A DNA stretch of 48,614 nucleotides from Chara braunii (taxonomy: Eukaryota; Plantae; Charophyceae), in the NCBI GenBank assembly GCA_003427395.1, contig BFEA01000043.1:4514632-4563245 (forward strand). The letters are read 5' to 3'. Shown piece after piece: positions 3,246-47,323 of this stretch. Under the pieces are notes generated by a model. It was not told the DNA's origin. It searched no databases and saw only the letters and a program-made list of their open reading frames with translations. Made by a program: the position numbers and the translations under genes. Positions within the stretch are counted from its first letter, which is position 1. Each line of letters begins with the position of its first letter.

Positions 3246-4316
3246 GCTGCCGTCTCCTTCCTTGTGTCGTCAATGCGCCGCTTTCGGCAGACTGTGCTAC
3301 GCAATGGACGGAGAACAAGGGATCCGGATGCTTTCACACCCGTTGAACGGCGTCTTCCCCCTCATCCCCCACCAGCTTCAGCTCCGGATGAAGGTTCTTC
3401 TTTCATGGTTGGCATATCTGGTCCAGAACAGAGGGCAGCGCAGGTTTCCTCTTTTCCGGAACGTGGGGCTGTGATTGACCGTGGACACACTGAGTTTATT
3501 ATTGAAGATGCCCGGGAAGGACATGTTGGTTCCCGCACAAATGGCGTCTCTCATCCGTTTTGGCGACAGGTACTTCATCATACTGCAAGACACGCCGAGC
3601 TCCCATCGTATGCAGGCTATGGAAATGAGAGTAGTTCTCATGATGTTCGAAGTGAGAGCTCAGTGGGCACCATTGGTTCTGGCACGAACCACCTCTCCCA
3701 CCCATTCTTGCCACAGGTGCTCCATCATGCCCCAAGGCATGCAGAGCACCCATCCTATGCAGAGGTTGGATATGAGGGGAGTTCTTTAGGTGTTGGGAGC
3801 GAGAGCCCAGTGCGCACATTGGTAGATCATTCAACACACAGAGACAGTGACGTAGATGACGAGCGAGAGCGCAGTGTGGCGAGCAGCATCTTAGCTGATC
3901 AAGCCTGGGCCTACCAACGATCGTCCATTTCAGAAGGCCAAGCGTGCCGTTCCCGAAGACAGACCACAGAAACTAGTGCTCCCCATGTGCATGTACTGCT
4001 CTCGGGACCTGAAGGGAATGTTCTCCGGGAAGGGAACAGCCAGCAGGTCTTGTGGGCAGAAGGTGTAACCGCCGGTGATGGCTTACGAGATCGGGCACAA
4101 GATAGAGTGCCAATTAGGGCACACGGGGAGCTCGCGGGTCCGCATGGATGGCCTCATAACGGGGCAGCCGCGTCATATGGTGTGTTGTGTTCACACCAGC
4201 CGGGTATCGAAAGAGTATCGGGAAGGGACGAGGACTCAACGATTGTTGAGCTGTTTGTAGATTCTCGACGCTATCAGGATAACGTCGTTTTGACGGGAGC
4301 CAACCGGCTGCCATGA
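3246..4316 (+). CDS. Large coding exon of an unknown protein with a 2x49-aa His-rich internal repeat; probably part of a decayed multi-exon gene or transposon gene
   Basis: 381-codon open frame (3171-4316). Acceptor-like TTGCTGCAG ends at 3245 and the first ATG is at 3273. The repeat copies (3525 and 3672, period 147 bp) differ at 15 synonymous codons. Downstream in-frame sequence has stops and a GTGAG donor near 4580. Confidence 0.55.
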   Translation, partial: AAVSFLVSSMRRFRQTVLRNGRRTRDPDAFTPVERRLPPHPPPASAPDEGSSFMVGISGPEQRAAQVSSFPERGAVIDRGHTEFIIEDAREGHVGSRTNGVSHPFWRQVLHHTARHAELPSYAGYGNESSSHDVRSESSVGTIGSGTNHLSHPFLPQVLHHAPRHAEHPSYAEVGYEGSSLGVGSESPVRTLVDHSTHRDSDVDDERERSVASSILADQAWAYQRSSISEGQACRSRRQTTETSAPHVHVLLSGPEGNVLREGNSQQVLWAEGVTAGDGLRDRAQDRVPIRAHGELAGPHGWPHNGAAASYGVLCSHQPGIERVSGRDEDSTIVELFVDSRRYQDNVVLTGANRLP

Positions 4317-10150: not shown

Positions 10151-11049
10151 GGGCCCAGATTTGCCGCAGGGGAAACAGTCCAGGGATCAGCAGGAGGAGT
10201 TTTGAGTCATTTTGTGACTCTGCACGACGACACTTCTGCAGCTTGCAGTGAAGGCTGCAGAAGCGTGAATAAGTGCCGCGTGGCACAGTTATGGGTTGCG
10301 CATTTCCAAGTCGGCGCTGGGAATTGTCGCCCCCCCCCACATTACACATTTACTACCTCCAGTACTACCAGCTAGGTGATGTATATGAGCTAATTGAATT
10401 ATTGAACCTACTTCCCTCTCTCCTGTGTGGCTCACATCTATTCTTTGTTACATAGTACTAACCGTCGGAATTTGATTTCACAACTGAACCGTGGTAATTT
10501 AATTTTATTACAACTTTTAGTCGCACTCTACAGAGACAGTTGCATTTGGCAATTGATGTCTCACAAATGTTTTAAGCCACCCGTACCTACCGCATTTTTC
10601 ATACCCCCCAGGTTCGAATGAATTTGGACTGGAGGGGCAGGCTGATTCGGCTACCGTGTTTACGGTAGCCCCAACCGGTAGGTACTGGTCGTTTAACAGT
10701 TTGAACTGGCGGTTCGAACCGTCGTATTCCTTTCAGCGGTTGCGAGGGCTGCTGTTGTCCTCATCTCAGATGTGTCAGACTGCTCTTCGATTTGTGCAGT
10801 GTTTTTAAATCATCAGCCTGTTTCGTATTTTTTATGACGACTATGTCGTTTGTAATTTTTTATTTTTTTTTGTCCTTGTTGAATTGTTTTTTAAACTTTT
10901 TCAAACTTTTTATGCTCGCCAGTTCGTTACCAGGCGTAACCTTTTTTTTTTTTTTTTTTTTTTTTTTGAAAGACCCCTTACTTGATTCACTGCAGGCGTA
11001 ACTTGATTCACTGCAGGTACGAGATATCACGCGTTCCTAATGCGACCGA

Positions 11050-22211: not shown

Positions 22212-25200
22212 TTTTTTTTTTTTTTTTTTTTTTTTTTAAACACNCCCCCACCAGTGTTAGTGGTGCTGATAAGAGCAGACACCACTAGCACCTGGGGAGA
22301 GGCTCCATCTATTGGTGGGGAGCATCACCTGCTGGGAAACAGGCCCAGCGTCCCATATACAGATCGAATTTAATTCCTGCCAGCATTGATTACCCTGGCC
22401 TCCAGGGGATTGACTGAGCAGGAGGCAGGGAAGGGGGGGACCTCTTCACCTTGGAACCGGCGCCAGATACCTATTGCTACACACAAGTTCCTCCCTCCCC
22501 CCTCGAGCCCCAGTCCTTTTTGTTGCTGGAAACCGGGTCGAGTGTCCCTTTGAATACGTCTTTTCTTACAGAAGGGTCAGCTGAGAAAGCAGGATTCCGA
22601 AACCAGGAGGAAAAGGACTGATTCTACTATTGCCACCGTGGCTAAAAGCTGATTCTTCCCTCCCCACCGTGGCTCAAAGCTGATTCTTTCCTCCCTCCTC
22701 TGCCCGCGCACTCTTGCACCCAGCCCTCGTTGAGCCATCGCTGTTCTGTCACGTCGATCCGCTGACCCGCTTACTCTGCTCCGTACCATTGCATGTCCAC
22801 CATTGCAAGCTGATGAGGCGGAAAGGGGTCGGGGAAGTCTGAGGGTGGTCACAGTGGGACTCGTTGGTCCATATTGGTCCATTCTTTGAAGCCTATGTTG
22901 TAGTCCCTTCTGAACTGTTCCCGTTCCTGCCCCTGCGTTTGCCCCTGTGTTTCTCCTCTCTCCCATTGGATGTGTGCGATCCAGCCCCCCTGTTCGCTTC
23001 CCAGCCAGTCCCTTGAGAATTGTTTGATTGCTTGTGTGATGTCTTTTTTTGCGTGGAGCCTGTCCAGTTGGCTTTTAACTTTTTGCCACCGCGTAAGGAG
23101 TTCTTGATTGATAAATGGTCTGATCATGTCCGTCACTTCCTCCCCTTCTGCTCGAACCCCTTCCATGGAAAGTATGCAGCGTTTTCTCCATAGTGCCCAG
23201 ATAATGGCTCTCCTTCCTATTTTAAACATGTTGTTCTCGAAGTCGCTGCCTGAGGGGAGGTCCATGCTTCACAGAGCAGCGCCCTCCAATCCCATGGCCA
23301 GGTGGAATCAGTTTCAAGCAGGCTCCATATCCTGTCCCACCGTCGCCATGTTAGCACCGCCCCCGGGCACAGCAGGAAGATATGTTTTATGGTTTCAGGG
23401 ATCTTTCGAGACGGGAAGGCTGTGTGGCAGGATTTACACCATGGCAGTGCCAAGCCTTTCTGTTCTAGATACGTGCGGTCTACCAGCCAGTTGTTAGTGG
23501 GAAGGCAGCGGTGCCCTATCTGCCATTGCAGGGAAGCGAACTTTGTCGGTTTAACTCTCGTGGTTGTAAACCATCGGATGGGGCGAAGGGTTCCTTGTCC
23601 CACATTCAGATGGGTCGGCCAGCGGGCCCTCACGATCTCTTTGAAGTTCACCCTTGGGCGCAGCAGCCGGTATGTGTGCTTCACGGACAGGCTGAGCAGC
23701 TGCTTATCTGAAATTTGTGGCGACCTATGTACTGGCTTCCAATGCGACTCCCCCGGGTCGAACGGCAGGTCTACGAGCGGGGTTTTCGGGCGAAACACTA
23801 TCCATTCATCTTTCTGCATCAACACCCGGAGCTTGTATAATTCCTTGTTTTTGCACCACTTCAGCTCCTCCGGGGTATGCTTAGAGAGGACATTATCCTT
23901 ATTCTTGTGGAAGAGGCTGATCTGAGACTCATCGGACCGTACCTCTACTACCTTACCCACACTCTCCTTGTCCCCCAGGATAGCCACCCTGTCCCATTGT
24001 GTCAATCGCGGTCCCTGCTCAGAATGCGCGCCCAATTGAGGGGGGTCGCAAAAATCAATTCTTCCAGGTTTCGTTCGACATCGTGACAGTACCTCATCGT
24101 GGCTCTCAGTTGCGAAGACGTTTTCCAGTTTTTTTTTGTTGGGTCCCATATATCCTTAATTATAACTATACCCTTTCTAACCCAGCTGCTCCACGGAGAG
24201 TCCGAGCTGCGGTACACCCTCCCATGCCTATCCGTGATGTTCCTATTGCCGAGGAGGGGTTGGCGCATCACCTCTTCCCAGGTGTTTGGCGAGGTTTTCT
24301 CTGGCAGCGGCAGCTGGCGCCAAGTCTTTAGAACACGGGGCCAGAAGTCATCTCTAGTCAGGTCCCTCCTTGCTTCATCTCGGCTCGAGATCCTGGCAGA
24401 CCAGGGCCGTCGCGGTATGGACCAGTAATGGTCTTCTATCCAGATCAGAGGGTGTACCCCCCGTGGTGCCTGCGGGGCTAACCTGGCAATATGTTCCAGC
24501 GCCAGGGAAAGCCATGGGAGATCTGGCGTGAACACCATTCTTCTCACCCACTGAGCAGTGCCGTCACTTGGATATCTGGGTCCAAAATTCCCAAGCCCCC
24601 TTTATCTTTAGGCTGGATAACTGACGACCATGCCACCCGACTGATGACATTCGGAAGCCCGCTGTTACCTCTCCACAACAGAGCAGTTATCTGCCGTTTA
24701 AGGGATTTAACCGCTTCTTTACTGAGGGCCTAGATTGCAGATTTGTACCATAGAGCAGCCAGTACTGTGTTGTTAATTGCCAATGCCCTACCTATTAGAG
24801 ATGTGTGCTTGTCGTTCCACTGGGTTAATTTTTCCAGCGCCGGTTTGAGGATCCAGTTGTCGTTGGAAGCAGGTCTTCCCAACGCTGTCAAGACGATTCC
24901 CAACACTGTAACCGAAGCCTCTTGCGGTAGCCACTTAACCTGTGGTAACTCTGGGGGTCGCACCCCTTGATGGTAGATCCACCACCCCAGTGTTTTGTTG
25001 CCCCAATTTATAATCATGTCAGAGACCGCCGTAAACCGCTCTAGCAGTCGCCTAATCTCTTCCATGTTCTCGAGGGTGGCGTCCATCAGTATAGGCAGGT
25101 CATCCGCGAACATCGAACAGACCGGGATTGCTTCCTCTGGGATGGCGGAGATTTGCAGTTTGGTAAGATCCTTGTTGGCCCGGAGGTTTGCAGCCAACGC

Positions 25201-25430
25201 CTCCATCACAATTATGAAGAGGAAAGGGGTCATCGGGTCCCCTTGTCGGACCGATCGTTGCAGCGAGATCACCGGTGCTAGGCGGCCGTTTATCTGGACA
25301 GTCATGGTAGCATTGAAGTGCAGAATCTCAATCCGACGCCGAAAAGACGGGCCAATGTTCATTTTTTCCATACATTTATCTAAGAAAAGTCAGTCCACGT
25401 GATCGTATGCTTTTTCAAAATCAATAAAAG
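22212..25430 (-). mobile_element. 5'-truncated, decayed L1/Tx1-like non-LTR retrotransposon (ORF2: RT, CCHC zinc finger, 3' UTR, poly-A)
   Basis: FIDFEKAYDHV near 25425, SVRQGDPMTPFLF, MFADD, CKSC...ETIKHIFLLCP; frameshifted pieces 24730-25371, 24002-24547, 23217-24149 and 22849-23265; poly-T at 22212-22237. Confidence 0.95.
24730..25371 (-). pseudogene. LINE reverse transcriptase core fragment
   Basis: RQGDP and FADD motifs. Confidence 0.93.
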
Positions 25431-37150: not shown

Positions 37151-38528
37151 TTGATGTTAGATCGCTAAAGGGTCAAGACATGCATTTCTTTTATGAAAAG
37201 TGTGACGCGCAACCTCACCCCAGCACGACTTCCTGATCAGAGTGGGAGTGGGCCCGGAAGTGTGAAAAAGGGGGTGTGCCAAGGATTTTAGGAAAGCCGG
37301 GTGGAATCACAGGTCGGAACTGGGATCTCCTGTGTCAAGGTTCCAAGGACCAAAATGCAAAGAGGTGCAGACGGACAGGAGACTTTCTCAGCTCGTGGCT
37401 TCCATGGCCAGGTACTAAGGACAGCCGGGTTTGGTGTTTAAGGTGGGTCCGTATGCGGTTAAATGGTGATAGGAGAGAATAAGATAGCGGGGAGGGAACT
37501 CAGCTTCTATGATGACGAGCCCGGGCTCAGCGAAAACCTGAAACGTTTGCGTGTTGGGGTATTGCGGGATCTGGGTGATGCAGCCTATGGCTTGCCGTAT
37601 ATCCCACTCGCATACACACTCATCTCCCGTCTGCTGCAGGAAGTCGGGGAGCCTCGATCGCAATCGATGAGAGAAAATATACGCTTCCCCGATATTCCAG
37701 GTACTCGTGGTCCCTCAAGCAATCACAATCTGTTACTCAGAAACGGACACTGAATTCCAACCAACGAATTCACCTTAATGCAATCATGTTCCTACCCATG
37801 CAGAAGTATACCAATCAGTACAGCCCCGGGCGTGAGTGCCTTGCGTACACAGGACGCCGAGGACGGGCTGATTTACTGGCCAACTGTAACGTATACATGT
37901 GGCCCAAGATCCATTCGTAACGCAACTCGAGGCGGCCAACTTCTCTATTTCCCTTCAATACCCGCATTCCCCAATCATTCCATCTCCAGACATAAACGGG
38001 AATTATGCACGCAAAAATTGGACGATCCAACCGCAATCATCACTTGTGACATCATCCATAAAAGAAAGAAATACGAGAGAACTCCGCAGAAAGGAGTAAG
38101 TCATACAATCGTACAAAAAATCCAAAATTACAAAGGCAAAAATGGCAGAAGCCGAAACCAAAATTCTTAGAAGGCAAGGAGAGAAGTTCACACACACCCC
38201 AGCGCGTTGTACGCTCTCACCACTTCACCATCCTCCTCCTTACTCCGATGCAGACAGTCCGTTGCCTTGGACCTACCAACAACCCAGAGTTGCCATCCTG
38301 CTTAGCCCGAGTATGCACGCCGGGTTCGCCCGTGCCCTGCAGTCCGTCATCGCCACACGTCAACCCCGCACACTCACCACGAGCTCGTCGGATCACCCAA
38401 CCCTGAACTCACCTCCATATATGCCTATACTCGTTAGTCGATCCTCTCGACCGCACTAACTCCACAAGTTTAGATTAGAGAGCGATTTTGTCGAGCTTGT
38501 GAAATTTATATCAATTAGCATTTGTGTG

Positions 38529-38895
38529 AAACTACTATGGTACCATGGCTTATGCTAATGCTTAGAGTGCAAGTAGTGATCTGCACCGACACTTATCGGC
38601 CTGACCCAAACGTCTTCGTGCAGACATTACCCTAACTCTAATGTTGAGGACGACTCGGGCACATGTGGGATCCATGCATATGTAGTCATCCCCCATCTGC
38701 ACCTCATCCCACAAAATCTATGGGCAGTGAACCTCCCTTCCACCAGGATGCGACATTCCGCTCTCCCCTATCCTAAGCATGATGCCTTCCTACCTAGGTT
38801 CCCCAAGAATCCACAATCCCAACGAATTCCCCCAATGAGAATTCTGACAGACCACAGCCTGGATGAAGCACCACCCGCAGGCATAGTGAGATGCC
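38529..38895. repeat. 367-bp direct repeat, copy 1 (candidate 3' pseudo-LTR)
   Basis: Ungapped match to 46339-46705 with 9 mismatches by manual count. Confidence 0.95.
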
Positions 38896-39952
38896 AACAC
38901 GGAGGGTCGCCACGCATCTTGAGAGCTTCCGCCGACCGATTCGTAAAACTAGAGGCGTGTCGAGATCGATTGGAGGAAGCACCAACCTCAACTTGGCAAC
39001 CTCCCAGCCACCGGGACAAAGCAGCTTACGCAGATAGCATTCGCCCTACCCACAACAGACCATCAACGCTAACCATACTAAGCGCAACACCCCCAGCGCC
39101 AAGGATTAATCGGGCCACGTGTAAAACAAAGCAACACCCATGCCGCGAGCAGGAATCACAAATGAAAAGGAGATGAGAGCAAAGCCCATACCCGCAATAA
39201 GGAATGTAGAAAGGGCGAGTGCAGAGCCGATAGCGCAGGGCCAAATGAGGGAAGCAGCGGCAGACGGGGGCAACGCCTGCGCAGGGCAGGTCGTCTAGTG
39301 GGGACCACGCATCCATGCAAAGTCCATAGCAAGCGGGCAAATACCAACCCCAAGTGCGAGCGAAAGAGCAAAAAGGAGGGGACATGCCAACGAGAGGGAA
39401 CATGTAAGAAAGAGAAAGGATCTGCGGCAGATATCCATAGCGGCAGCCCGGCTAGGCAATCAGAATGCAAGAAGAGGCTACAGCTCGCCGAACCCTCCGT
39501 ATCCCTACGCTTTGCACCACCCAGGAGTTGCCGACATCGAATAGTTGCAGCGAACGATAGACGAGTAGAACATCACCGTCTGCGTATCCAAGAAGGCGAG
39601 GAAGGAAAAATATGCCTAGCAGATCACGCAAAAGGACCCAAGTAGATGGGCAATGGCGAGAAGCTCCATATCTTCAAATCCTCCGTCCGCAAAAAGGTCA
39701 CTGTCGATCGTTCAACAACTCTGGTGACGATGCGAGAAGTTCCTACAGCAATCAGATAGACACCACAGCATACGGCAAAAGACATCCACAACGTAGAGAC
39801 CGGGGAAAACACGGAGGGGTTAAATCATACACATGAGGGGAGAGAGATGATGATGGGCGTGGGGAGCGAATAGGGGGCCAGGGAGTAAAAAAAAAGGTCC
39901 CAATTCGATAACGCGGCTCATTGAATGCCGACGTGGGGTAAGTGGGTAGTGG

Positions 39953-40012
39953 ATCTCGCCCTTAAGTACTTTTCACCGGTTTCCACAAACACCGGATCTT
40001 CAGAGAACAAAG
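39953..40012 (-). ncRNA. Type I hammerhead ribozyme (PLE-type, palindromic short stem III)
   Basis: Minus strand UUUGUUCU-CUGAAGA-U-CCGGU-loop-ACCGG-U-GAAA-AGUACU-UA/AGGGCGAG: intact core, stem II, palindromic stem III, and stem I with G-U pairs. Confidence 0.8.
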
Positions 40013-41303
40013 CAACTTCCACAACGTATCGAAAGGGACAGGAATACTAGCGGGGGACATGAATACTAGCGGGCAATGCCCATATTCCGTCAAGACGAAG
40101 AATGTTGCAGACAGCCAGGGAGAGAGGTCAGCCACCGACATTCCACGCAACCGGAGACAGCCATGCTATGTCCATTTGATCACCTGGCAAGAGACATCCA
40201 TACGGAACGAGGGAGGGGGTTGGGGGTGGGTGGTGGGTTCAATTATGGGGAGTTATAGAATTACGGTGATAGCTGCCATGGCCAAGATACGGCGCTTGTC
40301 CTCCACAAAACACGTCGCTGCTCAAGCCGACGAGCGCAGGCCTCCAAGGGTCAGCGCGGAGTTCACCTACGCGTGGTGATAAGAATGCGGTGGTTGATGG
40401 CGATAGTGTGGGGCGTAGTAATGTTGGTTACGCAGCGACAGCTCTCCACCACTCAAGGAGCCAAACAGCGGTCGCACCCTCTCGTGAAGGCGGCTATCAA
40501 GCGCGGGGAGCAGCCCCAAGGCACAGGCTCAGGCACCCCAGTCGGAGCGTGACGGCAGGGCCCTACGTGTGACAATCCAAAAGCCCAGTCGCGCAGCATA
40601 GGAATGGTAGCGTTGTGCTTGCGAACGCCAAGCTATGATGTGCGAGCTACGAATACTCCAAAGGGAGGCGCGTCATCACCGAGGAATGAGCGCAACCCTT
40701 CGGAGGTACAGGCAACCCTACGCATCAAATTGAGCGAGTTGGGTTACTCACTTGCGTCGTATATATTCAAAAAGAGTTCCCGCCCACCAATACGAATGTC
40801 CAGGGTGGGGAATGGGTGTCGGTCGTCCAACAGTTGGCGCCAAGGTCGGTTCTCAAAATCAAAAGGGAAGGCCGGCAGTGTGAGGGGAGCCCCTGGCCTA
40901 CCAAGGCTGCAGGGATTTTCTGTGTCAATTTGGGGCGAGGATTATCAGCGCCCCAGTCCAGGCCAAGGAAGGAGGGGGGGCCAGCTGCGTGAGCGGGCCA
41001 CTATGGCTTACAAAGGTGGTAGGGACTACCTCTAGGCGTTTGGAGGCGGGAATTATCGGGACCATGGGTGAAAAAAGGAGAGGGGGGGGGGGTGGCCGCC
41101 TGAAGGGGTACAATGTTTCAATCGAGGGTGACCAAGTGCAGACCCCAACAATGTAACCATGCATATTCAGACCCTTGCATGTGTGTGTGTGTGTGTGTGT
41201 GTGTGGCCCACCCCATCCCCGCCAGGAGGTAGGCCTGCTAACTTGAAGGCAGGTAACAGGTACCTGCCTTAGGCAGGGTACCTGCTAGCTACCATAGCAG
41301 CCC

Positions 41304-43548
41304 TTAATGGTTAGGGCATACCATGACACACAGACATGGATACACACATTGGGGGTAGGAAGAGAGGTTGAGTAGGATAGGGGATCTTACAGAGAAGGCT
41401 CTCCTCGTGTCTCTGCAGCAAACTCTGGGTGCCTTAAAATCCCGAGGGGAGTTAAGGACTCTATGGACACAGGCAATGCACCTGCTAGGCTTAAAGCCAT
41501 CATCAACCATGTAAGAGACCACACACAAAATCTCTTGTGCTGCCAGGTGCGGATCGGAATGACCAGAATAATGGCAACATGAGACAGTATGATATTCAAA
41601 GATTGCTGGACAGGCCTGTTCGACGCGTATTTAACATACCTAACGACCGGGAAGTCGAGAGCGCACGTTTTATCAAACTTTGTAGTCACAAAACTTCCCT
41701 CAGTTCCAGAGGTGACAATGATATCTGCGTTGAGGAACTGAGCTTTGGACCCGTATACTTCACCTGTTGGGGAGGTAGTGAATACGTCCGTCTGGTTCTT
41801 GATGTCAATCAGGTGACGGGGGTACAGAGAAAACAGGCCCTCGCTATCCTGGTCTGGGGAAGACTGCAAGAATCTCAGGATCGATGGATTGTTAAGCACG
41901 TGCAGATCGTCGATATACTTGAAGCAATGCTCGAATAGTGGCAGGAAGTGAAAAACCCTGCGCTCTACAAGTTTCATGATGAGACTGTACTCATATTTGA
42001 AGAAGTACACAGTGCACCAGGCAGGGGAACAAGGCAATCCCATAGGGATGTTGAGGATCTGTCTCCATATTTTCCCACCCAGAGATGTGAAACAGTGTCC
42101 AACCAGCCACTGCGTGATCATGGTGACCAATTGTGAGTCCACCCAAAATCGTTCAGGGGTAGGTTCCTGGTATGGGGATCGGTCCCAAGAGCATTTGAAA
42201 TGGTTGTCCTTACCGTGCTTACATCTGATCACGGAGCCCATATGTTCCTTAGCAGCAAATTTGAAGGTCGTTTTGACAAAGAATGATGTGGCAGCAACAA
42301 GGCTATCCTCTGATTCATCGATAGGGATAGTCTCGAAACAACGGGTAATATCAGCAGAAAAAAACAAGAAGACCTTCCCCGGCAAATTGTAGCAATAATC
42401 TTGCACAGAGTCAATAACCCACCATAAGGTGGTACCAACACCATGAAAACTTCGGAGATCGTCCGCAATTTCCTTACAATTAGCCATCACCGAAGGGGTA
42501 AAGAATTTCAGCAGGGAATCACATAGGCAGGCAATCAGAGTAAGGAAGGAAAACCAGGCGTTAGTCAACCATCTGAACGTTTGCTTGTGATGTTTGTACA
42601 GCGCCATTAGGTATGGAATCCTCGCATCCCCAATGGACAGCCACGGGAGGAATCAGACAGGGACATAGACGCTTCCCCTAAAAAAAATTTAGAGGTGGAA
42701 TTGACAGATTCAAAATCCTGGTTGGAGAGGCGTTCCAGAGCCAGCTTCCTCACAAGGTGGAGGCAAACAAACGAAAAGGTGTTGGCAGACTTGTCCGTGC
42801 CCGCGATATATAGTCGCTTAGACAGAAAATCAAGTTCAGTCTTCACCATATGTAACCTCAAATCACATGGCGGTTCTTTGTAAAATCTCGATTCAAAGAA
42901 ACCTACTAGTGTTTTGAGCTTGTAAGAAAGGAAATCATGCGCTCTGGATCGCATGCCTTCCGTAATCTACATCCTGGAAGAGAGAAATTATACCAGCGTC
43001 TGCCATGCTTTGAGGAATTCATGGAAGGCTTTCCCCGGGTTTCTGGGTCGCGAGGGGATGTGGTTCAGACCATTGCATAAGAGGCCGCACAACTTACGTA
43101 TGGAGGCTATGCAAGGATAAAGGGACAAAACATGAGATGATGGGGAAACAAAATGTTGGGCCATTTCTCGAGTACAGAAGTGATGGAATGGAGCAAAATG
43201 CTTTGTCATGCAAAAACAAGTGTCGCACTTAGAGCAAGATTGCACCCAATCATCCAAGTCAAAGTCGTCGAACACCCGAACGGGTTTGTAAAGAATAGAC
43301 TCCAGGGAGCACAAATAACTCCAACCAATGACAACTTTCGACAAGAGGACCAAAGCATCCGGAGGAAAGAATAAATCAATTGTCTCCTCAAGGATAGATC
43401 TGAATCGCACAAACTCCATAATGCGGCTTGTGTATGTAATATGTACAAAGAAGCTCTTTTTCTCTGATGTCTCATTCTTCAACCGTTTATTCCTCCCCGC
43501 CAGGTCACGGGTCATAGTGTCTCCAGCCTCCTGTACACAACATAGCAA
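41304..43548 (-). pseudogene. Penelope-like reverse transcriptase (Naiad/Chlamys-like), frameshifted into pieces 42988-43548, 42607-42954, 41387-42607 and 41304-41528
   Basis: CFC...SHV, GLNHIP, DKSANTFSFVC, YKHHKQTFRW, SADITRCFETIP, QILNIPMGLPCSP, KYIDDLHVLNN, LYP, QFLNADI, KFDK, SNRP. Confidence 0.9.
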
Positions 43549-43857
43549 GTAGGTCGATTATATTACACAGTATAGACCCCCTGAAGTAAGGTATACAGGC
43601 CCTGAGCGACACGCGCCACAGGTCGCAATCCCGCAACCAAAATCCTGTACAAGGAAAGATCAAACCAACCAAATATCAGACCTACACCGCAAGTGCTTAG
43701 CACGAGGCAACCAAGACGCAGAACGAACAACTAAACTATTCGCAGCCCTGAGTATACAAGCAGAGGACAAAAACCTGTTATTCAGTCAGACACCCAGCTC
43801 GGACATCCTCAAGGGTCATGAGACCGAGAGGGTCTCTCTGTTGGCGAAAAAAAATCT

Positions 43858-45483
43858 TCAGCCGATAAACAACATTCCCTTTGAGGTCGTCAGCCCACGA
43901 CAGTCCTTTCCTCTCACTTTGCTTGAGACAGAGGGGGCCCCGTCGGCCTGCGAGGTAACTGTGGAAACAGGCGGGGACGCTTCATACTTCACCGCATCCT
44001 GCTCACGCCCAGGAGGAAACAGCTGCTGCTGAACGGGGCTTGCCACGTAGAACTCCAAAGTGGTCTGCTGACCCTTCCTCACCTTTTTAGTGGAGGAGGA
44101 CGCCTCCTCGTGGTCCTTCCTCTTTTTGCCACCAGCCCGAACGTAGCGCGAAGGGAGGATCAATTTGGCCATTGTCTTCGGAAACTTGTGCAGCATGACA
44201 GCAAGGTCGTTGAGGATATTCTGGGGGGTCCTAGACGGGTCCGTGATAACACTGTATGCCATGGAGACCATGGTATCTCTCATATGAGTGAAGACCACGG
44301 AGGCGAGCACAGGGGCCCGCCCAGTTGTCTTGGCCAAGGCCCTGAAAGCCCTGGCGCGGGACCTGAGGGTGGGGGCATTTGGGAAGAGGTAATGAAGGTC
44401 AGAGAGGAGGTACCAAAACACATGGTCGAACCGTATGATGTTCTTCCCGCAATCACCTTCCCTAGAGGAATACATTGCCACTTGATGAAGGGGCGCCCTA
44501 CGTTCCAAATAGGCTTGAGTTCGGCCATCGCAGTCTGGATCCTAGGGCCCATAAAACCTCTGACCGCCAACATACATGGGGAGGCTACGCACTTGGTGGG
44601 ATCAAAATCTCCCACAATGGGCAACTTCATATTATCCGGAGTCAATGGATGGTCACCCCTAATTAGCTCAGTGTTCTCCATGAGAGTCTTCTCGTTACAC
44701 TTCTTCATCTCATCCTCAGAGAGGGAGGCGAGGAAGCGGTACGAGTCTGCACTAATCGGGGCAACGTAATTAAAGGTGAGGAGGTCCCACAGCTTGTCAT
44801 TTACCTCCCTCGACTGTGCCTCAATCCATCTACTGGGTGCAATAGGGAGGAACGCATTCCGGGTGAACTTGTTCACCTACGCTTTGTGATTGCTCGCAAT
44901 GACCTTAGCCCTCTCCTTCCTATTATCTGCTAGAAGCTTAGCATGAAATTCCCTCTCGGCTTCAGTAAGGGATTTGGGGTCGATACCGTCCTCACCATCC
45001 GAATCTGACACATCAGCAAGGACGGAGAGGTCCTTCTGGATCAGGCCCGTATCTCCATAAGTCCACAAACACCTTTTCTTTCATAGCTATGCCATCACGG
45101 ATACACATCTCCACCAACTCATCCTCGCCTGCAATGTTACCAGCCTGTGTGACCAAGAACCTCGTGAGATCAAGAAACACAGGTCTATCATTGACAAACG
45201 TCCACAACAAATCGCCCCACTGATCAAAAGACAAAATTGTGATGAGCGGGAGTTTGGGACAAGGGTCGCCTACAGAGTGGATTCTAACGAATTCCAGGAC
45301 TTTCTTAGAGGCGAGTGAGATCAGAGCCTCCGTCGGGCGAGAAGGGGCAGGGAAGTCACCCAGCCATGCCAAATCATCGGCGAGAAGATCCGTGTACCAT
45401 CCGTTGTCAGAAAACGAAGGTACCTGCCACATGTGAAGCACAGATCTCACATTAGCCACATGGTCCCCAAGCACCAAATGCAA
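43858..45483 (-). pseudogene. Unknown accessory ORF (~540 aa when joined) upstream of the PLE RT
   Basis: Four overlapping or abutting protein-like frames (45013-45483, 44877-45068, 44280-44876, 43858-44508); two are in frame across a single TAG; basic NLS-like GGKKRKD...KKVRK. Confidence 0.6.
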
Positions 45484-46338
45484 GCATTAAAACGCATGAG
45501 AGGAGAGCAATCCCGAATTAACAAGCATACAAACCCAAACAGCCAACGCGATTAGCAAAGGAACATGGAACCCAAGTCGGTGCAAAACATGAGGTAGACC
45601 ACAACATGACGACAGGGAGTCAGACCCCGTCGACAGCAAAAAGGAGAAAGCATCCCCTGTGTGTGTCTTATCACGATACAATACTGCCGCGATCACAATC
45701 GCGGCATGTTGCGTCAATAATTCATGCGGGGAGCGCCGATAGACAGGTCAAGGTCCATATGTCACGAAACCCAGGCGACTAGGCATCCCATAAGATGACG
45801 GGGATCTACAGCTCCTAGAATTTGAAAAAAAACAGGGCTTGCCACGTAGCAAAAACCTCGAGGAAAAGCGGCGAGTGAAGCACCACACCACCCATAGAGC
45901 AATAATCTTGTCAAGTACATCCGGTATGATCGTTACAACAGGAAAAAGAGGTACCCAGCCATACTTTCGGCACGGTGTATTTATCTGGCAACTGCTCCAT
46001 AAATTCACAAAATGCCTTGCCCTGAGAACAGTCATGCACTGGTCCTAGTGAGCACAAGCCACCATCTCTTGTCATAAACATGTCGTCATTTGCAAAAAGC
46101 ACAAGTAAACAAATAACCAATCAAGTAAGTAAACAAGTAAGGCTCAGCGTGCCATCCACATCAGGCATGGGTGCGAGAGTTTTGAGCATGTACATCAGTG
46201 GGGTAGCAGCAAACATCACAGCCAAGTAATAGCACCGAAAAGTGCCGTTCTGAGCCATTGCAGACATGTCCCTGTAAAGGAGCCTACTAGGATCGGAAAA
46301 CTTGACCCAACATCAACGAGCACCACATCATCATTCCT

Positions 46339-46705
46339 AAACTACTATGGTACCATGGCTTATGCTAATGCTTAGAGTGCAAGTAGTGATCTGCACCGAC
46401 GCTTATCGGCCTGACCCAAACGTCTTTCTGCAGACATTACCCTAACTCTAATGTTGAGGACGACTCGGGCACATGTGGGATCCATGCATATGTAGTCATC
46501 CCCCATCTGCGCCTCATCCCACAAAATCTATGGACAGTGAACCTCCCTTCCACCAAGATGCGATATTCCGCTCTCCCCTATCCTAAGCATGATGCCTTCC
46601 TACCTAGGCTCCCCAAGAATCCACAATCCCAACGAATTCCCCCAATGAGAATTCTGACGGACCACAGCCTGGATGAAGCACCACCCGCAGGCATAGTGAG
46701 ATGCC
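46339..46705. repeat. 367-bp direct repeat, copy 2 (candidate 5' pseudo-LTR)
   Basis: Match to 38529-38895. Confidence 0.95.
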
Positions 46706-47323
46706 TATGGGATGAGAAGTACCCAATACCTATCCCATACTAACACCCAGTGTGTGTGTAGGATTTCCCCCCCCCAAGATGAGTCCTACTATAGTCTAAG
46801 TTCGCTTTGTGTGGGCTCTCGTACAAGCGCCATAGTGACGGAAAACATACTGGTTGTACCCAGGCTTGACCATGGCAACCCCACGGACTAGTACATATTG
46901 ACGAGACTGACATATTGGAGGGTTCAAGTGGGCACGTGGAGGTATCGACGATTTCGACAGTTTTTTGGTTATCGACATTCTAGGCAGTAAACCCTCCCCT
47001 CTGCATCATTTCAATCTCAGTAGGTGCCCTGAAGAACACACGGTTTCAGATCCCGGTGCGTAAAGGCAATCTGCTAATGATTGTCTCAGAGGACAACCCC
47101 TGAGGATGCAGGCTCAATCTGTATCGCCCCAGCTCTAGTCGAGACGACACACTAACCTGCAGTCACTGCCCGCACCTTGCCACATACGTTTTCTATGACA
47201 CAAACGACCCCTCGACCTTTCCGGTCAGGGCGCTCTCTAATAATTTTAACTTCCCTAGCAAACGTTGAAACCACATGCGCATATGCTAAATAAATTTAGG
47301 GGAAACTACGTGGGAGTCAACCA

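What the first reader, a model, noticed from the sequence alone, without database searches (positions are those of the whole stretch)
38529..46705. Multi-ORF, apparently endonuclease-less Penelope-like retroelement with a ribozyme and long terminal direct repeats
Seen: on the minus strand the order is repeat, unknown ~540-aa ORF, PLE RT, ~2.4 kb containing a hammerhead and coding-like patches, repeat. No GIY-YIG motif is recognisable on either side of the RT; the thumb ends near 41304. Known: canonical Penelope and Naiad/Chlamys elements are compact and encode GIY-YIG, whereas EN-deficient PLEs with extra ORFs (Athena/Terminons, Coprina) are typically telomere-associated. No telomeric repeat is seen here. 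Inference: this may be a poorly described giant EN-less lineage that inserts internally, with the accessory ORF supplying a missing function.
Basis: partly seen in the sequence, partly recalled or inferred. Interest (0 to 1): 0.85.

Follow-up and report, generated by a model that had tools for sequence, protein, structure and literature searches.

The report
Decayed endonuclease-less Penelope-like retroelement (PLE-X type)
This is a real but dead 7.8-kb copy of an endonuclease-lacking Penelope-like retrotransposon of the "PLE-X" type, which was described in 2021 from the alga Chara braunii and from spike mosses, so the kind is known even though how it inserts without a nuclease is not.

Summary
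On the minus strand there are two 367-bp direct repeats (97.5% identical). Between them lie a ~540-aa upstream reading frame, a telomerase-like reverse transcriptase (RT), and a 2.8-kb non-coding tail with a hammerhead ribozyme. I found no GIY-YIG nuclease and no telomeric repeats.

This is not an undescribed lineage. The RT nests inside a clade of Chara braunii elements, next to the Selaginella elements that sit in 28S rDNA. The upstream frame is the conserved "N-terminal extension with a CxCX1-8C motif". Together with the CxC motif, the hammerhead and the lack of a nuclease, these are the features that Craig et al. 2021 (PMC8557442) give for "PLE-X" Chlamys-type elements, which they report as genome-wide in C. 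braunii.

The repeats are pseudo-LTRs, left by a 5'-truncated tandem copy. The flanks carry (CA)n and G-runs. This copy is broken by several frameshifts and stops, and poly(A) RNA reads gave no sign of expression.

The upstream protein shows no nuclease signature, and its structure model was too poor to search with.

New details: a conserved ~30-bp hairpin, G-tract and (CA)n directly after the RT stop, and a conserved ORF1 stop.

The scan's earlier notes on this element come from this same window.

The parts
46706..46775 (-). Upstream flank. G9 (46775-46767), (AC)5 (46759-50), then a 44-nt unmatched 'tail' before the repeat.
   Evidence: Read. G-run confirmed. Chlamys elements are reported to target (CA)n and (C)n and to carry 30-40-bp tails.
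46339..46705 (-). Upstream pseudo-LTR: the last 367 bp of a 5'-truncated tandem copy.
   Evidence: 97.5% identical to 38529-38895. Relatives have repeats of 683, 1293 and 1442 bp, and one includes RT sequence.
45487..46338 (-). 5' untranslated region of the full-length unit.
   Evidence: No Pfam hit in any frame. Only a 74-nt patch (45671-45598) is shared with L003.
43858..45486 (-). ORF1, also called the N-terminal extension (~540 aa). Probable ATG at 45432. Broken by two frame changes (near 45080-45016 and 44541-44283) and one in-frame stop (44879-44877). The CxCX7C zinc-knuckle region is at 44510-44440, and its first Cys is replaced here. Stop at 43860-43858.
   Evidence: Collinear with P0027 and with P0174/5/6/8, 47-75% identity. 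Homologous to the N-terminus of Selaginella PLE-X proteins P0155 and P0023. Weak Zn_ribbon_GRF_2 hits in relatives.
43516..43857 (-). Spacer between ORF1 and the RT frame. About 340 nt here, against 20-110 nt in C. braunii loci. It ends in a YAG and then the conserved ATG at 43515.
41304..43557 (-). PLE reverse transcriptase (~750 aa) in four pieces. CxC motif at 43236-43210, GLNHIP at 43071-43054, DK motif at 42798-42781, motif A at 42352-42323, motif B at 42061-42023, motif C (YIDDL) at 41917-41903, thumb to 41307, stop at 41306-41304. Broken by in-frame stops at 42990-42967 and by frame changes near 42652-42610 and 41630-41390.
   Evidence: 953 homologues, the best from C. braunii and Selaginella. 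Weak RVT_1 hit. The only PDB matches of the profile are TERTs, E about 0.7-1. Tree. Motif coordinates.
41180..41321 (-). Conserved 3'-UTR module directly after the RT stop: a ~30-bp hairpin, a G-rich tract, then (CA)13 (41205-41180).
   Evidence: 77-86% identical across five loci whose coding DNA is 64-71% identical. RNAalifold gives 34 pairs, 6 with compensatory changes. Highest contig depth of the element.
39946..40018 (-). Type I hammerhead ribozyme. Core CUGAAGA / GAAA, 5-bp helix II, palindromic short helix III (AAGUACUU), helix I up to 8 bp. Predicted cleavage between 39963 and 39962.
38896..39945 (-). Variable 3' untranslated region between the hammerhead and the terminal repeat.
   Evidence: No Pfam or tblastn signal. 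Not conserved between families.
38529..38895 (-). 3' terminal 367 bp of the element, the downstream copy of the pseudo-LTR.
38523..38528 (-). 3' flank CACACA. It is either the other half of a (CA)n target or a templated tail.
   Evidence: The L003 relative ends in (CA)6 at both unit ends, and L004 has a G25 run 28 bp past its 3' end.

Best explanation
The region is one decayed insertion of an endonuclease-deficient Penelope-like retrotransposon. It belongs to the Chlamys-related 'PLE-X' type known from Chara braunii and Selaginella.

The full unit is 7,810 bp (46338 to 38529, minus strand). It consists of a 5' UTR, ORF1 (the CxCX1-8C 'N-terminal extension'), a TERT-like RT with an N-terminal CxC motif and a long insertion between motifs A and B, and a 2.8-kb 3' UTR. 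The 3' UTR holds two conserved RNA islands: a hairpin/G-tract/(CA)n module and a dimer-type hammerhead.

The upstream 367-bp repeat is the 3' end of a severely 5'-truncated tandem copy, that is a pseudo-LTR and not a true LTR.

Inferred mechanism, not shown here: copying by target-primed reverse transcription that uses pre-existing 3'-OH ends and not a self-made nick. These ends probably lie at (CA/TG)n or homopolymer microsatellites. The hammerhead would process multimeric transcripts.

This copy is inactive. It has at least four frame changes and several stops, the upstream repeat has no hammerhead, and no RNA reads were found.
For: Anatomy and repeats.

Homology: the best homologues of the RT are C. 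braunii and Selaginella moellendorffii proteins. The Selaginella relative lies inside 28S rDNA, as published for PLE-X.

Linkage of ORF1 and RT: ORF1 plus RT are collinear in P0027 and in loci L001-L005. ORF1 carries the CxCX7C motif and is homologous to the Selaginella N-terminal extension.

Phylogeny: the window RT groups with L003 and L004 (97/94), then L005 (100/99), and all Chara rows form one clade (96/95).

No nuclease: no GIY-YIG in any frame here and none in intact relatives. Among 51 long homologues only P0135 has one, N-terminal and reaching Pfam's gathering score of 22.6, so the model can detect it in this superfamily.

Hammerhead: the core is invariant in window, L003, L004 and L005. 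The two L007 copies, found independently by the covariance model (E 5e-7 and 2e-5), each carry one core change. On six copies 84.8% of cells pair, six pairs change on both sides, and 1 of 500 shuffles reaches the covariation score. Helix III stays palindromic (AAGUACUU versus AAACGUUU).

Pseudo-LTRs: variable length, and in L003 the upstream copy includes RT sequence.

Flanks: (CA)n and G-runs. No telomeric repeats.

Literature: PMC8557442 section 9.
Against: I could not compare the sequence with the published PLE-X consensus library, because the supplement is not held. The family-level identity is therefore inferred from features and from the closest proteins.

The organism is coded, so 'Chara braunii' is an inference from the nearest homologues and from a 2018 DNA study.

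Rfam's hammerhead models do not score this motif. In this subgroup positions 10.1/11.1 are U/U and not the usual G-C.

The hammerhead lies outside the 367-bp repeat and 1.4 kb from the 3' end, so it does not define the unit's ends here.

The link to TERT in PDB is weak (E about 0.7-1).

Nothing shown here bears on how the element integrates.
Confidence: 0.85

Rival explanations
1. It is an ordinary EN+ Chlamys element, and only this decayed copy has lost its N-terminal GIY-YIG domain through deletion or mutation.
For: The copy is heavily mutated. EN+ relatives with an N-terminal GIY-YIG exist among the homologues (P0135).
Against: Intact or better-preserved relatives (P0027, P0003, P0006, P0174-P0178) also lack GIY-YIG. 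ORF1 and the RT N-terminus are collinear with them without a gap where a ~70-100-aa nuclease could have been.
Confidence: 0.03
2. It is a composite. A PLE body is joined to an unrelated repeat or nested element that makes up the 2.8-kb 3' part, so the terminal repeats and the hammerhead do not belong to the PLE.
For: Most of the 3' region is not conserved between families. The hammerhead is outside the terminal repeat. Elsewhere in this genome the scan noted hammerheads in dispersed repeats.
Against: The hairpin module and the hammerhead island occur in the same order downstream of the RT in L003 and L004. A hammerhead also accompanies PLE-X ORF1 in L005 and L007. The 367-bp repeat brackets exactly one unit, and the published PLE-X description includes hammerheads.
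Confidence: 0.05
3. It is a two-gene PLE lineage distinct from published PLE-X. ORF1 would be a separately translated accessory protein and not an N-terminal extension joined by splicing.
For: The ORF1 stop position is conserved between this copy, P0174 and P0178. ORF1 is a stand-alone uninterrupted ORF in L003 and L005. A conserved ATG-led motif (M-T/A-R-D-P/L) starts the RT frame in the window, L002 and L004 and, with Cys for Arg, in L003.
Against: The L001 and L005 families lack that ATG. Instead they have a GT...CAG intron-like spacer, and the gene model P0027 fuses the two parts. ORF1 is homologous to the Selaginella extension that Craig et al. infer to be joined by an intron. No RNA reads were available to decide. 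Either way the element would still be the published type.
Confidence: 0.07

Closest known systems
PLE-X families of the Chlamys group (PLE-X1_sTam and the unnamed C. braunii families; Craig, Yushenova, Rodriguez & Arkhipova 2021, PMC8557442)
   Same: No GIY-YIG. A CxC motif before the RT. An N-terminal extension/ORF1 with CxCX1-8C. A hammerhead. Pseudo-LTR from tandem insertion. Internal, non-telomeric location. The nearest homologues are from Chara and Selaginella.
   Different: Protein identity to the annotated C. braunii proteins is only 37-75%, and RT identity to the fetched C. braunii loci is 51-61%, so it may be another family of the type. The Selaginella members target 28S rDNA, whereas this copy sits next to (CA)n and G-runs. 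I could not compare it with the published consensus sequences.
EN+ Chlamys and Naiad elements (N-terminal GIY-YIG PLEs)
   Same: RT with CxC linker motif, DK motif and a long insertion between motifs A and B (IFD-like). Pseudo-LTRs. A bias for (CA)n/(C)n targets. Length within 3.3-8.2 kb.
   Different: There is no GIY-YIG nuclease. Most Chlamys and Naiad elements lack canonical hammerheads, and this one has one.
Athena and Coprina (EN-deficient, telomere-associated PLEs; Terminons)
   Same: Endonuclease-deficient PLE with a hammerhead and extra coding capacity.
   Different: No telomeric or reverse-complement telomeric repeats in 48.6 kb. The element is internal. These elements are not reported to have a CxC motif. 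No labelled Athena or Coprina sequence was available, so their distance from this RT was not tested.
PLE-type hammerheads (Cervera & de la Pena 2014, PMC4209133)
   Same: Type I topology. A short palindromic helix III, which implies dimeric action. An extra nucleotide after position 9.
   Different: The usual G10.1-C11.1 pair is U/U in window, L003 and L004, G/U in L005, and canonical G-C only in L007. The motif lies 1.4 kb inside the 3' UTR and not in this copy's terminal repeat. It is below every Rfam hammerhead threshold.

Membership tests
Penelope-like elements (PLE) | TERT-related RT with PLE N-terminal motifs (DKG/DK) and core motifs 1-7 plus thumb | tested here: met
   DK motif at 42798-42781. 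Motifs A, B and C intact. 953 homologues, including proteins of the published Chara and Selaginella PLE groups. The only PDB hits of the RT profile are TERTs, but they are weak, E 0.7-1.
Penelope-like elements (PLE) | Partial tandem insertion that gives pseudo-LTRs of variable length | tested here: met
   367 bp here; 683, 1293 and 1442 bp in L004, L001 and L003. The upstream copy in L003 includes RT sequence.
Penelope-like elements (PLE) | Hammerhead ribozyme motif | tested here: met
   Descriptor hit unique in the window. Conserved, with covariation, in six copies. Not recognised by Rfam.
Canonical EN+ PLEs and EN+ Naiad/Chlamys | GIY-YIG endonuclease, C-terminal or N-terminal | tested here: not met
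   No PF01541 hit in any minus-strand stretch of 50 aa or more at E up to 1-10, nor in intact relatives. Positive control: P0135 scores 22.7 bits.
Naiad/Chlamys clade | CxC (zf-CDGSH-like) motif N-terminal to the RT | tested here: met
   CSKCDTCFC at 43236-43210. This region aligns with P0027 residues 467-654.
Naiad/Chlamys clade | Insertion-in-fingers-like stretch between RT motifs A and B | tested here: inconclusive
   There are about 87 residues between the end of motif A and the start of motif B, and the TERT alignment spans this region. It was not compared with a labelled IFD alignment.
PLE-X (EN-minus Chlamys subgroup) | Unique N-terminal extension with a conserved CxCX1-8C motif | tested here: met
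   ORF1 aligns with C. braunii proteins that carry KCxCx7C and with the Selaginella proteins P0155 and P0023. In this copy the first Cys is replaced by Trp and a frame change follows.
PLE-X (EN-minus Chlamys subgroup) | RT groups with the Chara and Selaginella PLE-X sequences | tested here: met
   The window nests in an all-Chara clade (96/95). The Selaginella rDNA element is a neighbouring lineage. The tree has no labelled reference PLE clades, so placement within PLEs as a whole was not tested.
PLE-X (EN-minus Chlamys subgroup) | Identity to a curated consensus (Repbase, or Supplementary file S1 of PMC8557442) | not testable with these tools
   No supplementary files are held for this paper.
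Athena/Coprina (telomeric EN-minus PLEs) | Reverse-complement telomeric repeats next to the hammerhead, and a telomeric location | tested here: not met
   No (TTTAGGG)n, (TTAGGG)n or (TTTTAGGG)n, two or more units, on either strand of the window.
LTR retrotransposons / DIRS | True LTRs with integrase, tyrosine recombinase, RNase H or protease | tested here: not met
   No such Pfam domains in any stretch. Repeat length varies between relatives.

The most novel reading that the evidence does not exclude
The conserved module right after the RT stop (a ~30-bp hairpin, a G-tract and (CA)n), together with the ORF1 zinc-knuckle (weakly GRF-zinc-ribbon-like), could be the missing integration device of these nuclease-less elements. 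The RNA's (CA)n would anneal to exposed (TG)n single-stranded 3' ends at microsatellites. ORF1 would hold the single-stranded DNA. This would be a microsatellite analogue of the way Athena and Coprina prime on telomeric overhangs. If true, it would answer the question that Craig et al. left open: how PLE-X inserts genome-wide without an endonuclease.
Probability: 0.12. Interest if true: 0.65.

Novelty: new member of a known kind. Interest (0 to 1): 0.3.

Why it matters
As a find it is mostly ordinary. It is one dead copy of a retrotransposon type already described in the group of algae from which all its closest homologues come.

Its value is as a worked example of PLE-X anatomy. PLE-X matters because it spreads through chromosomes without any recognisable nuclease, and because PLE RTs are the closest relatives of telomerase.

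Three details seen here give concrete handles for testing how such elements are translated, processed and primed:
- two small RNA islands conserved in an otherwise free-drifting 3' UTR
- a conserved ORF1 stop followed by a conserved restart or acceptor site
- flanks with (CA)n and G-runs

Tried and rejected
- **Rfam.** I scanned the window at gathering threshold, the 10-kb region at E up to 10, L001 at E up to 1 and L002-L006 at gathering threshold. No hammerhead family was reported. The motif was found only with my own descriptor and covariance model.
- **Structure of ORF1.** AlphaFold2 on full-length P0175 with 12 sequences gave pLDDT 42. The conserved core with 19 sequences gave pLDDT 50. 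Foldseek against PDB gave nothing at E up to 0.001. VIA-align wide gave a best Z of 4.4, which is helical noise. The ESM Atlas gave no usable hit. A profile search of PDB sequences gave nothing. ORF1's fold and activity therefore stay unknown, and this is not evidence against a function.
- **RNA evidence.** Three oligo-dT RNA runs of the same species label were sampled at 6-13% and laid on 39900-45899. They gave two partial reads in total and no splice junctions. Expression and the ORF1-RT splice question could not be tested. DNA contigs confirmed the sequence and showed extra depth at the conserved islands.
- **Same-family copies through protein databases.** None is above 62% identity for the RT, so I collected no same-family copies and built no consensus.
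- **P0180** (ORF1-like N-terminus plus a strong RVT_1 hit). Its gene model spans 9.4 kb with introns and is probably chimeric. I did not pursue it.
- **The 'coding-like patches' in 41300-38900.** No support.
- **Broken frames.** They were always searched piece by piece. In the tree script, stops in the fetched loci were read as X.

Full report
**What is there**

On the minus strand the region is bounded by two direct repeats, 46705-46339 and 38895-38529. They are 367 bp long and 97.5% identical, and no further copy of the element lies in the window.

Between the repeats, stop-free stretches on the minus strand fall into two groups.
- An upstream group of four pieces: 45486-45016, 45080-44880, 44876-44283 and 44541-43861, with the stop at 43860-43858.
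- A downstream group of four pieces: 43557-42991, 42966-42610, 42652-41390 and 41630-41307, with the stop at 41306-41304.

So neither 'ORF' is open in this copy. Each is interrupted by two frame changes and at least one in-frame stop. The remaining 2.8 kb down to 38529 has no Pfam hit and no translated similarity to related loci.

**The RT and its relatives**

The 406-aa ORF gives only a weak RVT_1 match. An exhaustive HMMER search found 953 relatives. The best are hypothetical proteins of Chara braunii. Next come a cluster of Selaginella moellendorffii proteins and unnamed proteins from environmental contigs.

A profile of the RT core hits only telomerase RTs in PDB, weakly (E 0.7-1). That alignment spans the long stretch between motifs A and B. 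The Selaginella relative P0155/P0009 lies inside a 28S rRNA gene.

In a maximum-likelihood tree the window's RT groups with the RTs of C. braunii loci L003 and L004 (97/94), then L005 (100/99). All Chara rows form one clade (96/95), and Selaginella is a neighbouring lineage.

The N-terminal part of the RT frame carries a CxC motif (CSKCDTCFC, 43236-43210), GLNHIP and a DK motif. Motifs A, B and C (YIDDL) are intact.

**The upstream frame**

All four pieces are collinear with the first 477 residues of the C. braunii protein P0027, whose remainder is the RT. They are also collinear with four stand-alone C. braunii proteins of 527-567 aa, at 47-75% identity. In L003 and L005 this frame is a single uninterrupted ORF of 546 and 531 codons.

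The conserved core reads IWNVGRPYLKCxCx7C...WxDHxxWYLL. It recurs in more distant C. braunii proteins that continue into the RT, and in the N-terminus of the Selaginella proteins.

In this copy the first Cys of the knuckle is Trp, and a frame change follows. Pfam gives only weak GRF-like zinc-ribbon matches in relatives, E 0.006-0.06.

**No nuclease**

No GIY-YIG hit appears in any minus-strand stretch of 50 aa or more. None appears in intact relatives either.

Of 51 long homologues only P0135 has the domain. It is N-terminal, at residues 164-204, and scores 22.7 bits against a cut-off of 22.6. This shows that the model can detect the domain in this superfamily.

In the C. braunii loci the RT frame starts 20-110 nt after the ORF1 stop. 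That leaves no room for a lost nuclease domain.

**The hammerhead**

Rfam reports none. Read directly, 40003-39955 is CUGAAGA, then a 5-bp helix II, then GAAA, then the palindrome AAGUACUU, then A, with a helix I of up to 8 bp. A descriptor with these constraints finds exactly this one site in both strands of the window and none in 30 shuffles.

The site is one of only two islands conserved in the 3' UTRs of related loci. It aligns with L003, L004 and L005. In those copies the core is invariant and helix II changes in a compensatory way.

A covariance model built from these four found two further copies in L007 that had not been used to build it (E 5e-7 and 2e-5). In them helix II is almost wholly exchanged, and helix III is a different palindrome, AAACGUUU. 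Each L007 copy carries one change in the CUGANGA core, which fits decayed copies.

On the six copies 84.8% of cells pair, six pairs change on both sides, and 1 of 500 shuffles reaches the covariation score. Slid controls pair at 34-61%.

A short palindromic helix III is the signature of PLE hammerheads thought to act as dimers (PMC4209133). One deviation: in this subgroup positions 10.1/11.1 are U/U and not G-C.

**Ends and flanks**

Related C. braunii units have terminal repeats of 683, 1293 and 1442 bp. In L003 the upstream copy also contains RT sequence. The repeats are therefore the 3' parts of 5'-truncated tandem copies, that is pseudo-LTRs.

Here the upstream copy kept only 367 bp. That is why the hammerhead, 1.4 kb from the 3' end, is not duplicated.

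On the minus strand the upstream flank reads G9, then (AC)5, then 44 unmatched bases, then the repeat. The 3' end is followed by CACACA. L003's unit ends in (CA)6, and L004 has a G25 run 28 bp past its end. No telomeric repeat occurs in the window.

**Comparison with the literature**

Craig et al. 2021 (PMC8557442) describe three Chlamys types in C. braunii. The third, 'PLE-X', is shared with spike mosses. Its features are:
- canonical hammerheads
- the CxC motif
- no GIY-YIG
- genome-wide distribution in C. braunii
- 28S-specific insertion in Selaginella

Chlamys elements are given as 3.3-8.2 kb, with (CA)n and (C)n target bias and 30-40-bp tails. Every one of these features was found here. 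The authors state that it 'remains to be seen' how the group integrates without an endonuclease.

The finding is thus a member of a described kind and not a new lineage. Whether it equals one of their curated families could not be checked. The organism name is coded in the read tool.

**State of this copy**

The repeats differ by 2.5%, and both reading frames are broken. Three poly(A) RNA runs of the same species label, partly sampled, gave two partial reads over 6 kb and no junctions. DNA contigs of a 2018 study reproduce the sequence. They show extra depth at the hairpin module (87 against about 13), at the hammerhead (61) and at part of ORF1 (55). This fits these being the parts shared with other copies at 90% identity or more.

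**New details**

1. Directly after the RT stop lies a ~110-nt block, 77-86% identical across five loci whose coding DNA is 64-71% identical. It folds into a ~30-bp hairpin with six compensatory pairs and is followed by a G-tract and (CA)n. In L001 the pseudo-LTR begins in that (CA)n.
2. The ORF1 stop position is conserved. It is followed by a YAG and, in the window, L002, L003 and L004, by a conserved ATG-led motif. L001 and L005 instead have a GT...CAG spacer. Two ORFs or a short intron both remain possible.

**What failed**

Two structure predictions of ORF1 were of low confidence. Fold, atlas and PDB-profile searches gave nothing. No claim about ORF1's activity can be made.

Noticed in passing
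window 41180-41321 (minus); L001 16230-16338, L003 13880-13986, L004 14715-14823, L005 13860-13958: A conserved ~30-bp hairpin, a G-rich tract and (CA)n lie directly after the RT stop. This block is better conserved than the coding sequence across PLE-X families, and six of its pairs show compensatory changes. The published account of PLE-X read here does not mention it.
   Followed up: partly
window 43858-43515 (minus); L001-L005 junctions: The ORF1 stop is conserved. The RT frame resumes 20-110 nt later in C. braunii loci but about 340 nt later here. A conserved YAG and then an ATG-led motif follow in one subgroup, and a GT...CAG spacer in another.
   Followed up: partly
window 40035-40073: A 19-nt unit (GGGACAGGAATACTAGCGG on the plus strand) is repeated 2.1 times, 95% matched, immediately upstream of the hammerhead on the minus strand.
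   Followed up: no
window 23217-25371 (minus): Fragments of a LINE-like retrotransposon: zf-RVT at E 3e-4 and RVT_1 at E 5e-7. The surroundings of the element are rich in transposable elements.
   Followed up: no
L007 (C. braunii BFEA01000459.1), 4087-4158 and 10482-10552: Two further hammerheads of the same family, with canonical G10.1-C11.1 and a different palindromic helix III. They lie in the locus of P0180, whose gene model joins an ORF1-like N-terminus to a strong LINE-type RVT_1 domain and is probably chimeric.
   Followed up: partly
L003 16839 and L004 16408: In two different families a repeated segment starts about 250 nt downstream of the hammerhead cleavage site (253 and 250 nt). 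A 37-nt island 92% identical between the two loci lies just beyond. This may mark a boundary of unknown meaning.
   Followed up: no
L002 11375-11480 and 13347-13451; L004 3459-3510 and 3582-3694: Matches to U6 snRNA (three, one of them partial) and U2 snRNA (one) lie within a few kb of PLE-X copies in C. braunii loci.
   Followed up: no
proteins P0007, P0010, P0011, P0013, P0020, P0024, P0185-P0195: Many proteins of 640-780 aa from short environmental contigs (3-7 kb) are related to this RT at 30-36% identity and form their own clades. They are PLE-like elements of unidentified hosts.
   Followed up: no
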